Below are positions 44,963-50,168 of a stretch of DNA of 64,000 nt, piece by piece. The notes below the pieces were generated by a model that was given only the letters and a program-made list of their open reading frames with translations, did no database searches and was not told the origin of the DNA. Made by a program: the position numbers and the translations under genes. Source of the stretch: Podarcis bocagei (lineage: Eukaryota); assembly GCA_964188305.1 (NCBI GenBank), contig OZ076885.1; one strand, given 5' to 3'. Positions within the stretch are counted from its first letter, which is position 1, and every line of letters begins with the position of its first letter.

Positions 44963-45210
44963 CAGTGGTACCTTGGTACTCGAATGGCTTGGTTCCCAAA
45001 AAAATGAACTCCAGAACGCCGCAAACCCGAAAGGTGTTCTAGGTTGTGAATGTTTTTTGAACGCCTAATGTCCAACGTGACAGACAAGTGGCTTCCGATT
45101 GGCTCTTCTGATTGCAAGAGCCAATCAGAAGCCGTGCCTTGGAAATCGAACGTTTCGGAAGTTGAACATCCTTCTGGAACAGATTACGTTCAGCATCTGA
45201 GGTACCACTG
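44963..45210. mobile_element. Tc1/mariner (Tigger-like) MITE, older
   Basis: ta|cagtggtacct ... gaggtaccactg|tg. Confidence 0.7.
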
Positions 45211-45405
45211 TGTAAACTAAATCCTAAAATAATGTCCACCCTTTGATTCAAGGTATATTTTAAAATATATGAATGTTTTAATCATCTTGCAGCATTACAA
45301 AGTGTTGTCCTAACATGATAATTGATTGATAGTATCTGGTAGGTACAAGATGAATTTTTCAAGAAAGCATTTTAGTAAAATGTAAATAATTTTTTCCCCA
45401 TACAG

Positions 45406-48400
45406 AGATTTCTAGCTCTATTATTGTGTCTTCTGAGGAAGAAAGAACTGAGAGTTACACCAGCGGCCTACAATTATCTGATAGAGATAAAACACTTGAA
45501 CTCATGCCTGAAGATCCAGTTTATTCTAGCAGTTTAGAGGTGAAAAGGGAGAAGAGCAATGTCCCAACCTTCCTCAAGCATGTGTCAAATGTTGAAATAA
45601 GTTTAGGAGATTTAGCTAGACTTTCTGTTGTAGTTACTGGGGATCCAAAACCACAGATACAATGGTATTTCAATAGTGTTAAGCTGACATCATCTGCTGA
45701 CTATAAGTTTGTGTTTGATGATGAAAACTATAGCCTCATTATTCTCTCCACAAAATTTGACCATGAAGGGGAATATACTTGCATTGCTAGTAATATCCAT
45801 GGAGAGACGGCCTGCTCTGCTTATCTGAAGGTCAACCCTAAGGGAGATGAAAGGGAACTGGAGGCAGAATTCACTGCAGAGAAGACAGGAAGTCCTCAAC
45901 CTCCATATTTTGTTAGGAAGCTAGACCCTGTTCAGTGTGCACAAGGTGCTCCTGCTGTGTTTGAGTACAAAGTGGCTGGGTACCCACCTCCAGAGATTCA
46001 GTGGTTTAGGGGAAGCAACCAGATTTTCTCCTGTGCACAATACACTATCATTCATAATCGAGATGGTTCTGGGTCACTAATGGTGAATAACTGCCAGGGG
46101 CCCGATGGTGGCTTATACATCTGTAAGGGAATCAACCTCATAGGTGAAGCCTCTAGCAGTGCAGAACTTCTTGTTCTCTTAGACGTGCCTGGGGAGGCTC
46201 CATATAAGGAACAGAAGAGTAAACAGAAAACACGCACCAAGTCATATAAAGAAACTGTAAGTGACGAGGCTACCATCTCACGGATATATGCCGTTAAACT
46301 GCCTGGTGATGATAGGCATGATGGGCAGCATGTGATGTATACAATTGGAACTGAAGATAGGCATTCACTACATAGTGAAGAGGTAGATGTTTTGCAGGTG
46401 GCTTCCTACTCAACAGCTACTGTACAGCAGGAAGCCCTTCTGACCCAACAAGTAGCCTTGCTTGAGTCTCACAAAGTTGGAGAAATTGCAGATCCATCTT
46501 CTCAGGCCAGTGAAAGGGTGGCTTCTTCAGCTTTTACCACAGGTGAGGTGAAGGAGCATCCCGGTTTCCTAGAGCAACACTCTGAACCAATTCAAAGCCC
46601 ACCAATAGTCGAATTGCCAGGTTCCTGGAGCCACCAAGTTTCTGACATCTGTTTACCTGTTGTGGAGGAAATAAACCAAGAAGACAAAGAAAAGGGGCTG
46701 CAAACCAAGCTTCCAGAAATGGTCAGGCCAACGTCAGCTATAGAGCAAACATCTCAGTTTGCCTCCATTATATCTGAGGAGAAATATGTGGTAAGCCCAG
46801 GTGAGTCTGCTGTATTCTCAGTCCCAGGAGCTGAGGAAGTTATTGAAACCAGTGAGCCTAAACATGCAGTGTGTGTTCCTAGAATTGAGGGCATCCAAGA
46901 ATTGTCCAAGGAAAGTTCTTTGGCAGACCACACACACAAGTGGGAGAATGTCGCACCAGCTAAAGAACGAGGCAGCTTTTTTCAGTCTGTTGTAGCAGCA
47001 GAACAATGCAAGATAAGTGAAGCTCATGCTGAGGCAATTGATTATGCTGATTCACCTGCAGAAGTTCGTCCAACCCAAGAATCATCCAATGTATTGCATG
47101 TGGCTACGATTGCCTCTGAACAGATGTTCCCCAAAGAGTCCGCCTTTGATGCAACCATTGCAGATCAGCAGAAGGGCTCACTGGAACAGGACAGGCTTGT
47201 CCAAACAGCTCTGGTTGCTGAAGAAAAGCAGCAGCTCTTTGATGAACACACTGAGGACCTTCCCAGGTTAGACTGCACAGTGGTAGCGGAAATACAAAGA
47301 GAGGGTGAAAAGCCACTGCATTTGCCTGTTGTACATGGACAAGGCTCACTTGCTAGGGAAGAGCATTTTAGTTCTGAAGTCCCCCTGGAAGATGAGGCAC
47401 TGTCTAGGAAAAGCCCATGTTTGCTACACTGCTTAGTAACAGAAGAACAAGTCTCCACGTCTTGTGAAGATGCTAAGCAGTTTCCTCCTCTGGCAGAGGC
47501 AGTTAACATTCAGGTCACCCAGGAGCCCATTTCTGTGTTGCATCTCCAAACGAGCCAAACTGAGCAAGTGTTGCCTAAGGAAGGCATCTTGGCTGTACAA
47601 GAACCCGAATCCCAAAATGCTTTGCAGAAAGCTGAAATAATGCTCAAACGTGCTGTGGCGTCTGAGGAAAAAAACAAGATAGCTGCCGAGGCCCTAGAGG
47701 CCTTTCAGAGTGGCATTGCTGGAGAATGCCCTGTGGCTATAGCAGAGCCTCAGCTTCGTAAGTGTCTGACCACTGTGGCTGAGGAGATGCTTCTGCCCAA
47801 AGAGGAAATCCTCCCCGAAGCAGGAAAAGAGCAGAAAGCTACCCTGAGGAAGGAAGACTTTCAAACAGTGATGCAGGTATCTGATGTGACTGAAGAGAGG
47901 GTTTTGGATGTCGGACATGCTGAGCCATTTGAGGCTGTTCAGGCCATGAGTTGTGAGGTGATGTCTGAGCCCAGGTTGCCTTCAGAATCCACCTGCGTTG
48001 AGGAGCAAGGTGTTCCGATAGAGAGCATCGATCTCTTGGAAGCCACAGAGCAAGAATTTGCAGCCCGCATCCAAGAAGGTCAGTCAGTCAGGCTCCCAAT
48101 GTCATTGGAGGAAAAACAGCCATTAAAGGAAGAGCACTTGGACAAGATCACAAGGCCAGATGCTGAGAACGTAAAGGCCCAGAAGCAACTGGGGCTGCTT
48201 ATGGATGTGCCTGAAACATGGGAAAACAAAGTGCTTCGGAAAGAACAAGAACTTGCAGCTGAGACTCCAGTATGTTGTAGCTTAGATATAAAGGCTCAGA
48301 TCAGAAGGGCCCTGAAAGTAGCTCTGACAAATGAACAGCACTTATTTCCATTCGATGCTTTCGATGATATTGAGAGCGTTCAATTAAAAACTGTAACAGT

Positions 48401-49269
48401 GATCAAAGAACCTAAACATGCAACATGCACTTGCCTTATAATCTTGGAAAGTTCCAATACTGCAGAAATAACTCTCTCTCTAGATGGAATATATTCTCAG
48501 ACAGCTGATTTCAAAAGCGAATTGCAAGCTGCTGTTCATTCCATTATTTATGATGAGAAACATGTTCTGACAGCAGAGGAACCCAGTGCCATACCAGAAC
48601 CTAAACACCACAAGTTGCTTGCTTCTTGTTCACCTTCCAAACTAATGCAGTCTGCTACTGTAACTGAGACACCTGTTCAGCAACAATCTGTCAGTAATAT
48701 TATTGGCTCACCTGAGCTACATCATGCTTACCTGAGTACTGAATCAGAAATACAGGAGGAGCAACTTGTGTCTATTCAAGAAGTCCAAACTATTGCTCTC
48801 AGTGAGCACATTAAAGATGTAGGTACAACCACACTCACCCTTGATATTCCTGTAGCAGCAGCCCCAGTTGAGAGGTTAATAGATGCTCTAAAAGTGAAAG
48901 AGAGAAAGGAAGAACTTTTTGAGGAAAATGAAGGGGAGGCACATGTAGTTAAGGCTAGCAAACGAGAAGACAGTCTGGTGAGCAGGGATTGTCCCATCAT
49001 GCGCCAAAGTTTTATAGACACTGTTGTTGAAGAAGGTGACAGTGTAAGTCTTACTTCCATTATAGAAAATGTTAAAGTGGTGAACTGGTATTTTGGGGAT
49101 AAGCTGGTATCTTCAGGAAATGAGTTCAAGTGCTTGCAAGACCATGACACATACACACTAGTAATCAACCAAGCATTCAAGGAAGTGCATCAAGGAGAAT
49201 ACACCTGTGAGGCTCTGAATGAAGGTGGAAAAACAACAGCAGCCGCGAAACTCACAGTTGTAAAAAGAG
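45406..49269 (+). CDS. TTN: titin N2B exon (exon 49): Ig I24, I25, N2B unique sequence, I26; 1288 codons
   Basis: tacag| and g|gttgga, 3864 nt, phase 1-1; SADYKFVFD, CAQGAPAVFEY, FKCLQDHDTYTLVI..HQGEYTCEALN..AKLTVVKR match N2B. Confidence 0.96.
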
Positions 49270-50168
49270 GTTGGAATATGGGGATAAAATATTGCTTTCC
49301 TATTTTCACTCATTTGCTAACTGAATAGAACACACATATACATATTTGTATCTCTAGTATCATTTTGGATACAGATATAAGAAGTATATAAACTTCAGCT
49401 GTGCATCACCAAACTAATCACAGATCCTTCACTTTTTGTTTCCTCTTTAGAACTTTTATTTCTTTAAATATATTTCTTATTCACACCTTTTATTTGCATT
49501 TTTCACTTTTTGCTACTGAAACAAAATTAACTTTTGTTTCATGAATGATGATTGTTAAATAAAACTATTTGTAATTTCAGATTTTTAAAAAAGAGTGCAT
49601 GTCTTAGGAGCACTTTCATCCCCATATCCGCAGAGCAACTTGGTTCACTTTTCCTTTTCATTGCTACAATAAAGATGCAATCCTAAACACGCTTACTAGG
49701 GAGGAAGCCCCACTGAGCACAATGAGACTTGCTTCTGAGTAGACGTGCCAAGAGATTGCACAGCACGTTGTAGAAGTCATTGCACCATTCTAGCATAATG
49801 TCACACCTTTCATGTTGAAAATGTTCTGGTACAACCTGGTATAATTTTATATATCGTGTTGTTTGCATGCCTTTAATAGTAAGTAGCACATCAGAGTATC
49901 TTCAGAGTTCCATTATGCACTGCAATGTATGTAGCCCTCTGGTAGACTGAGCACTGCTTTTGGTTTGCTTTCACCTCTGACAACCATTTTTCTTTACAGC
50001 CACTTTCCTTGGATAGCTCATGAAACCACACATCTCATTTCTGTTGGTCACTTTATTAACAGTGTTTTGGAATGTACACTTATAAGCACCATACATGCTA
50101 TTAGTATTACCATATCCACATGAACGTGGATGGTTGTAACCACATTATTCTTTCACTTTTAACTTCAG

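What the first reader, a model, noticed from the sequence alone, without database searches (positions are those of the whole stretch)
46764..48570. Hidden ~74-residue tandem periodicity in the N2B 'unique' sequence
Seen: from SIISEEKY (46764) to SIIYDEKH (48540) is 592 aa, which divides into 8 units of 74,74,74,74,76,72,75,73 aa. Each unit starts with xxxxEE[KQR] or a close variant; most have EP near residues 30-33, and several have LH[LV] at ~37-39 and [LF]xKE at ~48-51 (e.g. CLVTEEQ..VTQEPISVLHL..VLPKEGIL versus SVVAAEQ..PTQESSNVLHV..MFPKESAF). A partial ninth unit follows and a decayed unit probably precedes. Established: N2B-us is treated as a disordered cardiac spring and phospho-hub. Inference: it is a degenerate repeat array whose copy number sets spring contour length.
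Basis: partly seen in the sequence, partly recalled or inferred. Interest (0 to 1): 0.75.

Follow-up and report, generated by a model that had tools for sequence, protein, structure and literature searches.

The report
Ancient 74-residue repeats in titin N2B
The "unique, non-modular" spring segment of heart titin (N2B-us) in this lizard-like reptile is a very old tandem array of about ten 74-residue units, kept in the same register from sharks to squamates, and birds and a mammal have each lost the first four units.

Summary
In the titin N2B exon (window 45406-49269, +) lag-74 self-similarity has z about 9 in the single sequence and 16.4 in a 19-species profile, with harmonics at 148 and 222. 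Shuffled controls peak near 4.

Units 1-5 and 7 pass leave-one-out HMM tests. Units 0, 6 and 9 are marginal. Unit 8 has no consensus signal and is the core of the folded alpha/beta domain already described in human N2B-us.

All ten units (aa 373-1112, nt 46542-48761) match position by position those of a shark, a skate, teleosts and a frog. The array therefore predates jawed-vertebrate diversification, and copy number is frozen rather than variable.

Birds and a beaver keep only units 4-9, which roughly halves the spring. The beaver's own sequence shows no significant periodicity. That may explain why the mammal-centred papers I searched call the segment non-modular.

Among 1.84 billion protein representatives the unit occurs only in N2B exons. 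Pfam has no model for it, and I found no paper describing it.

Unit function is inferred: modular spring length plus evenly spaced docking motifs, possibly for FHL proteins.

The parts
45406..49269 (+). Titin N2B exon (Ig-Ig-unique sequence-Ig), 3864 nt, phase 1-1
   Evidence: Open frame 45426-49328. Acceptor cag| and donor G|gt read. A 4174-nt contig of run X1 (close relative, 57 differences) covers 45404-49269 without gaps and continues on both sides into non-intron letters, which marks it as spliced mRNA. Pfam finds I-set Ig domains at both ends.
46182..48983 (+). N2B unique sequence (N2B-us), exon aa 253-1186, 934 aa
   Evidence: It lies between the second and third Ig domains. Pfam has no hit inside it.
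46182..46541 (+). Non-repeat leader of N2B-us (aa 253-372)
   Evidence: No lag-74 signal here. It is absent in birds and mostly absent in the beaver.
46542..46763 (+). Unit 0 (aa 373-446), decayed
   Evidence: In-register hhalign hit at aa 376-431, score 20.2, E 0.0026. Local lag-74 score is high in the single sequence. Orthologous to shark unit 0, score 82. The single-sequence HMM gives no signal, 0.4 bits.
46764..46985 (+). Unit 1 (aa 447-520)
   Evidence: Leave-one-out 15.8 bits against a null maximum of 10.4.
46986..47207 (+). Unit 2 (aa 521-594)
   Evidence: Leave-one-out 26.5 bits. hhalign to other units gives E 1e-5 to 2.5e-6.
47208..47429 (+). Unit 3 (aa 595-668)
   Evidence: Leave-one-out 27.8 bits. 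Ortholog scores are 154 with the shark and 156 with the teleost.
47430..47651 (+). Unit 4 (aa 669-742), closest to the consensus
   Evidence: Leave-one-out 48.1 bits. It is the first unit retained in birds and in the beaver.
47652..47873 (+). Unit 5 (aa 743-816)
   Evidence: Leave-one-out 21.0 bits.
47874..48095 (+). Unit 6 (aa 817-890), diverged from the consensus but highly conserved between species
   Evidence: Leave-one-out 5.3 bits, marginal. Ortholog scores of 119-171 are among the highest of any unit in each species compared. It keeps the 74-aa register in the shark, teleost, bird and frog; the beaver's copy is 69 aa.
48096..48317 (+). Unit 7 (aa 891-964)
   Evidence: The unit profile hits aa 892-955 with score 37.5, E 2e-6, against a null maximum of 16.3. 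Leave-one-out 13.8 bits.
48318..48539 (+). Unit 8 (aa 965-1038), the beta-strand core of the folded domain
   Evidence: No consensus signal, 0.7 bits. It is in register, and its EPKHATC lies exactly 7x74 residues after the EPKHAVC of unit 1. AF2 places strands at aa 982-993, 998-1007 and 1012-1020.
48288..48575 (+). Predicted folded helix / three strands / helix domain (aa about 955-1050)
   Evidence: AF2 with a 20-sequence alignment gives pLDDT 67-75 here and below 50 elsewhere. The layout matches the 115-aa domain at residues 354-468 of human N2B-us (PMC11530556). No convincing PDB fold match, best Z 4.7.
48540..48761 (+). Unit 9 (aa 1039-1112), decayed
   Evidence: In-register hhalign hit at aa 1039-1095, score 19.0, E 0.011, against a null maximum of 16.3. 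Leave-one-out 6.9 bits.
48762..48983 (+). C-terminal tail of N2B-us (aa 1113-1186), no repeat signal
48993..49259 (+). Third Ig domain (I26-type)
   Evidence: Pfam Ig_2 / I-set at aa 1190-1278.

Best explanation
N2B-us is not a unique sequence. It is a tandem array of about ten 74-residue units (exon aa 373-1112) made by duplications that predate the split of cartilaginous and bony vertebrates. The units have since diverged to 9-24% identity. Selection has kept the exact 74-residue spacing and a few anchor positions: EE at 5-6, E13, L18, E32, L39, LPKE at 48-51, P59, A64 and D/E69. Most units are disordered, with a recurrent helix across each unit boundary. Unit 8 and its two boundary helices form the small folded alpha/beta domain. 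Inferred working: the array is a modular entropic spring whose length changes in unit-sized steps, and which presents evenly spaced short docking motifs to partners of N2B-us such as the multi-LIM proteins FHL1 and FHL2. Copy number is fixed in sharks, a skate, teleosts and squamates; in the frog units 1-2 are shortened. Birds and a mammal have each lost units 0-3, which roughly halves the spring.
For: Shown here. (1) Periodicity: z about 9 in the single sequence and 16.4 in the profile. (2) Profile-profile score 72.3 against a shuffle maximum of 24.7. (3) Leave-one-out HMM scores. (4) Tandem in-register hits in species left out of HMM training: a skate-like sequence, the shark Mustelus, the frog Leptodactylus and others. 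(5) Unit-by-unit orthology in a 74-aa register between the reptile and shark, frog, bird and beaver. (6) Similarity is at protein level only: nucleotide identity is 29-47% and highest at codon position 2, and TRF finds no repeat. (8) AF2 predicts a folded domain at aa 955-1050 and helices at unit boundaries (aa 518-533, 569-608, 728-748, 799-815), with the rest below pLDDT 50. (9) The exon appears whole in a spliced transcript contig. From the literature: N2B-us is an extensible spring (PMC2150553). Human N2B-us has a 115-aa folded domain and 24 AF2-predicted FHL2 sites, 14 of them in residues 79-308 (PMC11530556). With beaver numbering as a proxy, residues 79-308 fall on units 4-6 (inference). 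The N2B element has 1302 aa in a turtle and 876 aa in the rat, and that length difference is linked to compliance (PMC11033294).
Against: Units 0 and 8 have no single-sequence similarity to the consensus, and units 6 and 9 are marginal; calling them units rests on register and on profile hits just above the null. No experiment or calculation here ties the conserved unit positions to FHL or any other ligand; the published site list exists only as a figure. The AF2 models used shallow alignments (19-20 sequences) and have modest confidence. The mammal is represented by one beaver sequence plus published lengths. The claim that bird and mammal losses are independent rests on parsimony, with a published turtle length as the only bracket.
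Confidence: 0.8

Rival explanations
1. The periodicity is convergent. A periodic partner or structural constraint imposes motifs every 74 residues on sequence that never duplicated.
For: Only about a dozen of the 74 columns are well conserved. Exact spacing is preserved for hundreds of millions of years in otherwise fast-evolving sequence, which points to a spacing constraint.
Against: Similarity between units runs over 60-70 aligned columns, not only the anchor motifs. Held-out units score up to 48 bits. Cross-species paralogous matches are seen, for example reptile unit 2 with shark unit 3 at score 71. A spacing constraint and descent by duplication are also compatible with each other.
Confidence: 0.1
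2. The ancestral unit was a small folded alpha/beta domain like unit 8. N2B-us is then an array of decayed or conditionally folding mini-domains rather than an originally disordered repeat.
For: The folded domain spans exactly one unit plus the two boundary helices. Boundary helices recur in the other units. Unit 8 keeps E32-P33 in register with unit 1.
Against: AF2 predicts no strands in units 1-5. Unit 8 has no significant match to the unit consensus. The fold has no PDB relative that could anchor an origin.
Confidence: 0.2
3. The signal is chance or a composition artefact of a Glu-rich low-complexity region.
Against: Residue and column shuffles that keep composition never approach the observed values. 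The same lag is the top or a near-top peak in most of the roughly 30 independent orthologs tested.
Confidence: 0.01
4. The signal is a recent DNA tandem duplication or an assembly artefact in this genome.
For: None beyond the tandem layout.
Against: TRF finds no repeat with the 222-nt period. Units share 29-47% nucleotide identity. A transcript contig from a related species has the same structure. The orthologs share the array.
Confidence: 0.01

Closest known systems
Titin N2B unique sequence (N2B-us / N2Bus3) of mammals, including its 115-aa folded domain (Sun et al. 2024, PMC11530556)
   Same: It is the orthologous element: same exon layout (Ig-Ig-us-Ig), the same helix / three strands / helix domain near the C-terminal third, and the same place in titin. 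Beaver units 4-9 match the reptile's units position by position.
   Different: The papers read here describe it as a 572-residue unique or 'nonmodular' sequence (PMC2150553, PMC3114084, PMC8553726). Here it is 934 aa with ten periodic units. The mammal keeps only units 4-9, and its own sequence shows no significant lag-74 signal (z 2.3).
Titin PEVK segment (about 28-residue PPAK repeats and poly-E motifs)
   Same: It is a disordered titin spring element built from degenerate tandem repeats, and its length sets compliance.
   Different: The period here is 74, not about 28; no peak at 26-29 appears among the top lags. The motifs differ (EE, KEP, LPKE). PEVK length varies by exon number and splicing, whereas this array is one exon with frozen copy number.
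Nebulin / nebulette simple repeats (about 35 aa) and super-repeats
   Same: It is a muscle-filament protein with a short degenerate repeat nested in a longer period. Here the 37 and 74 harmonics play that part.
   Different: I did not compare sequences with nebulin. Published work reports that N2B-us does not bind actin (cited in PMC8553726). The 37-aa sub-period is confined to the flanks and is not significant in the unit consensus.
Reported length difference of the N2B element between turtle (1302 aa) and rat (876 aa) (Honda et al. 2018, as cited in PMC11033294)
   Same: The same long-versus-short contrast between an ectotherm and a mammal, linked to ventricular compliance.
   Different: As cited, that work compares lengths only. 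Here the difference is resolved as loss of the leader plus units 0-3 of a repeat array, and it is seen in birds as well.

Membership tests
Titin N2B element (cardiac I-band exon: Ig-Ig-unique sequence-Ig) | A single large exon encoding two I-set Ig domains, a long non-Ig insertion and a third Ig domain | tested here: met
   Three I-set stretches flank a 934-aa Pfam-empty insertion. Splice sites are at 45406 and 49269.
Titin N2B element (cardiac I-band exon: Ig-Ig-unique sequence-Ig) | Orthology to proteins annotated as titin | tested here: met
   Collinear full-length matches to 'titin-like' records of Mustelus, Rhinoraja, Leptodactylus, Castor, Cariama and Motacilla, and to a Phrynosoma protein.
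Titin N2B element (cardiac I-band exon: Ig-Ig-unique sequence-Ig) | A folded alpha/beta domain of about 115 aa inside N2B-us | tested here: met
   AF2 predicts helix / three strands / helix at aa 955-1050 with pLDDT 67-75. This is a prediction only.
Titin N2B element (cardiac I-band exon: Ig-Ig-unique sequence-Ig) | Expression in heart, and binding of FHL1/2, alphaB-crystallin and kinases | not testable with these tools
   A spliced transcript contig holds the exon, but its tissue is unknown. Three bulk RNA runs had no reads on the exon.
Protein tandem repeat | Self-similarity at a constant period beyond composition-matched controls | tested here: met
Protein tandem repeat | Three or more contiguous copies, each recognised by a profile built without it | tested here: met
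   Units 1-5 and 7 pass leave-one-out. Units 6 and 9 are marginal; units 0 and 8 are not recognised.
Protein tandem repeat | The same repeat is recovered in orthologs not used to build the profile | tested here: met
   P0037, P0038, P0055 (shark), P0071 (frog), P0070 and P0088 (beaver).
PEVK-type repeats | A period of about 26-28 residues with PPAK or poly-E motifs | tested here: not met
   The top lags are 74, 148, 37 and 111, with none at 26-29. The consensus has no PPAK motif.
Any curated Pfam repeat or domain | A match of the unit region to a Pfam-A model | tested here: not met
   There are 0 families for aa 447-816 at E up to 1.

The most novel reading that the evidence does not exclude
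The two endothermic lineages, birds and mammals, independently deleted the same N-terminal block (leader plus units 0-3) of a ten-unit array that every ectotherm sampled retains (with some units shortened in the frog). This stiffened the cardiac titin spring in unit-sized steps. The retained units 4-7 would be the FHL-docking modules, and the array would descend from a chain of small folded domains of which unit 8 is the last survivor.
Probability: 0.25. Interest if true: 0.8.

Novelty: new variant of a known kind. Interest (0 to 1): 0.66.

Why it matters
N2B-us is one of the three springs that set diastolic stiffness. It is a signalling hub (FHL1/2, ERK2, PKA/PKG, PP5, small heat-shock proteins) and a site of cardiomyopathy variants, yet it is treated as featureless unique sequence.

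A unit register supplies several things that are missing:
- A coordinate system for comparing binding sites, phosphosites, cysteines and patient variants across species.
- An explanation for why the folded domain sits where it does.
- A concrete account of the published long (turtle, fish) versus short (rat, human) N2B element as loss of defined units.
- Natural constructs (single units, or unit deletions and additions) for force spectroscopy and binding studies.

It is also a striking case of exact length conservation (740 residues, 74-residue register) in a largely disordered region over the whole history of jawed vertebrates.

Tried and rejected
- hhalign in self-comparison mode returned nothing, so I compared cut segments instead.
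- A 37-residue half-unit was tested. hhalign of half-profiles gave no hit, and circular autocorrelation of the unit consensus was not significant (z 2.5 against a 95th percentile of 3.15). The strong lag-37 peak in the full profile (z 7.2) comes from the flanks, aa 327-512 and 845-1067, not from the core. I therefore keep 74 as the unit and leave 37 open.
- A structure search with the folded domain gave only noise-level matches, best Z 4.7 to PX domains.
- The first cluster look-up gave no names.
- The profile word search added only two sequences.
- Three bulk RNA-seq runs of a related species had no reads on the exon, so they say nothing about expression or internal splicing.
- The supplement of PMC11530556 holds the FHL2 site map only as images, so I could not test whether the sites are periodic.
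- One non-titin hit of the big search, P0078 (6790 aa), matches only profile positions 4-21 seventeen times. It has no BLAST similarity to N2B exons and no unit at domain E 0.01, so I reject it as low-complexity.
- No human sequence was fetched or used; human facts are residue numbers taken from papers.
Full report
WHAT IS THERE. The finding lies inside one long exon of titin on the + strand. The open frame runs 45426-49328. The acceptor (cag|) and donor (G|gt) put the exon at 45406-49269, in phase 1-1. A 4174-nt contig of run X1, from a close relative with 57 differences, covers 45404-49269 without a gap. It continues on both sides into letters that are not the flanking introns, so it is spliced mRNA carrying the whole exon with no internal splicing. 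Pfam finds I-set Ig domains at both ends and nothing in the 934 residues between them, exon aa 253-1186. The best relatives are squamate sequences at 64-65% identity, one of them from Phrynosoma. This is the N2B element, and aa 253-1186 is N2B-us.

CHECK OF THE OBSERVATION.
- BLOSUM62 autocorrelation of the single sequence gives z=8.9-9.0 at lag 74 and z=5.0-6.8 at lag 148. Smaller peaks sit at 37 and 111. The 95th percentile of the maximum z over 200 lags in 500 shuffles is 3.6-3.7.
- Lag 74 (or 73) is the top or a near-top peak in most of the 16 orthologous exon ORFs found first, including teleosts at 28-33% identity.
- In a weighted 19-species profile, lag 74 reaches z=16.4, lag 148 z=8.2, lags 221-223 z=7.2 and lag 37 z=7.2. 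The null 99th percentile is 3.9.
- Profile-profile comparison of units 1-3 with units 4-6 scores 72.3 (E 1.9e-10). One hundred column shuffles gave mean 13.7, sd 2.7 and maximum 24.7.

Composition and chance are therefore excluded.

HOW MANY UNITS.
- Leave-one-unit-out HMMs score units 1-5 at 15.8, 26.5, 27.8, 48.1 and 21.0 bits, and unit 7 at 13.8. The null maximum is about 10.
- Units 6 and 9 score 5.3 and 6.9, which is marginal.
- Units 0 and 8 score about 0.
- With the multi-species unit profile, in-register hits appear for unit 7 (score 37.5, E 2e-6), unit 0 (20.2) and unit 9 (19.0). The null maximum is 16.3, computed on the downstream flank only.

Six units are therefore solid, three are weakly supported, and unit 8 is a unit only by position. 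The array spans aa 373-1112, nt 46542-48761.

The best-conserved columns are E5, E6, E13, L18, E32 (98%), L39, L48-P49-K50-E51 (E 98%), P59, A64 and D/E69.

AGE AND EVOLUTION.
- The DNA shows no tandem repeat with the 222-nt period. Units share 29-47% nucleotide and 9-24% amino-acid identity, and the lag-222 excess is highest at codon position 2.
- Each reptile unit is the best match of the unit at the same position in a teleost.
- The same holds in the shark Mustelus asterias: diagonal scores of 35-167 for all ten units, with unit 4 the one exception, where the diagonal (44) is not the highest in its row. It also holds in a skate-like sequence, again with weak diagonals at the decayed units.
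- It holds in the frog Leptodactylus for units 0 and 3-8.
- Unit boundaries sit 73-74 residues apart from unit 2 or 3 to unit 8 in the shark, skate, teleosts and frog.

The array was therefore complete before cartilaginous and bony vertebrates split, and no unit has been gained since. Changes are losses in unit-sized or half-unit-sized pieces:
- Teleosts lack a 38-residue half of unit 0.
- One unnamed relative (P0037) lacks 63 of the 74 residues of unit 3.
- Birds (named hits Cariama, Phalacrocorax, Apaloderma, Motacilla, Junco) go from the second Ig domain almost directly into unit 4. Their N2B-us is about 506-511 aa.
- The beaver (P0088) keeps units 4-9, with diagonal scores 55, 96, 119, 90, 125 and 22. 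Its N2B-us is about 558 aa.

Published figures agree: 572 residues in human (PMC2150553), and an N2B element of 876 aa in rat against 1302 aa in a turtle (PMC11033294). Squamates keep the full array, and the published turtle length is close to this exon's, which suggests turtles do too. On that basis I infer that the bird and mammal losses are independent. This inference needs denser sampling.

The beaver's own sequence has no significant lag-74 peak (z 2.3). That may explain why work centred on mammals did not see the repeat.

STRUCTURE.
- AF2 on aa 817-1186 (20-sequence alignment) predicts a helix / three strands / helix domain at aa 955-1050 with pLDDT 67-75, and disorder elsewhere.
- This matches the 115-aa domain shown experimentally at residues 354-468 of human N2B-us (PMC11530556).
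- In unit terms it is the helix across the 7/8 boundary, the body of unit 8, and the helix across the 8/9 boundary.
- AF2 on units 1-5 gives mostly pLDDT below 50. Helices recur across unit boundaries at aa 518-533, 569-608, 728-748 and 799-815.
- A structure search with the domain gave only noise-level matches.

IS THE UNIT KNOWN OR FOUND ELSEWHERE.
- Pfam has no model for the region.
- A profile of 83 units searched against 1.84 billion representatives gave 29 hits at E up to 0.001. Of these, 28 align collinearly with N2B exons or are fragments of them. The last, P0078, is a low-complexity match to positions 4-21 only.
- Full-text searches and four titin papers that I searched for repeat terms around N2B-us gave no description of a repeat there; one calls it 'nonmodular'.
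- Subscription-only papers were not searchable, for example Witt et al. 1998 and Honda et al. 2018, so prior description cannot be fully excluded.

HOW IT LIKELY WORKS. What is shown is an ancient array with frozen register, mostly disordered, with one folded unit and lineage-specific unit losses. What is inferred follows.
- At 0.38 nm per residue (PMC2150553), the reptile N2B-us has a contour length of about 355 nm, against about 194 nm in birds and about 215 nm in mammals. Losing units 0-3 plus the leader would therefore stiffen the spring.
- The conserved, evenly spaced anchor motifs look like repeated short docking sites.
- The published FHL2-binding fragment (human residues 79-308, holding 14 of the 24 predicted LIM sites) falls on units 4-6 when beaver numbering is used as a proxy.

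I could not test whether those sites follow the unit register.

VERDICT. It is a new repeat family inside a well-studied protein, of moderate to high interest to titin and disordered-protein specialists.

Noticed in passing
window 48030-48089 (exon aa 869-888, inside unit 6): This is the most conserved stretch of the whole N2B-us: LEAxEQxFAxRIQEGQSVR, with F, A, I, E, G, Q, S and V invariant from shark-like fish to squamates and birds. AF2 predicts a helix here. Its function is unknown to me, and it could be a specific binding site.
   Followed up: partly
window 46542-48539 (units 0-8): Cysteines recur at fixed unit positions. Position 37/38 carries a Cys in units 0, 1, 5 and 8 of this reptile, and positions 12 and 38 are Cys in 17% and 11% of all units across species. 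This may bear on the published disulfide stiffening of N2B-us.
   Followed up: no
window 46404-46961 and 47958-48626 (exon aa 327-512 and 845-1067): A 37-residue half-period is strong in the two flanks of the array but absent in core units 2-5. Teleosts lack a 38-residue half of unit 0. The 74-aa unit may be a doublet of an older unit of about 37 aa, but this is not established.
   Followed up: partly
window 45119-45152 (intron upstream of the N2B exon): About 30 reads in each of three RNA-seq runs of a related species match only this 34-nt stretch, with unrelated letters on both sides. It is probably a short piece shared with an abundant transcript or repeat from elsewhere.
   Followed up: no
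P0037 (unnamed relative, about 50% identical), residues 635-646: Nearly exact deletion of unit 3, with 11 of 74 residues left. It is a natural single-unit deletion variant.
   Followed up: partly
window 47208-47651, lag 444 nt: Similarity two units apart (lag 148 aa, 444 nt; units 2 and 4 share 47% nucleotide identity) is as strong as or stronger than between neighbours. This hints that part of the array grew by duplication of two-unit blocks.
   Followed up: no
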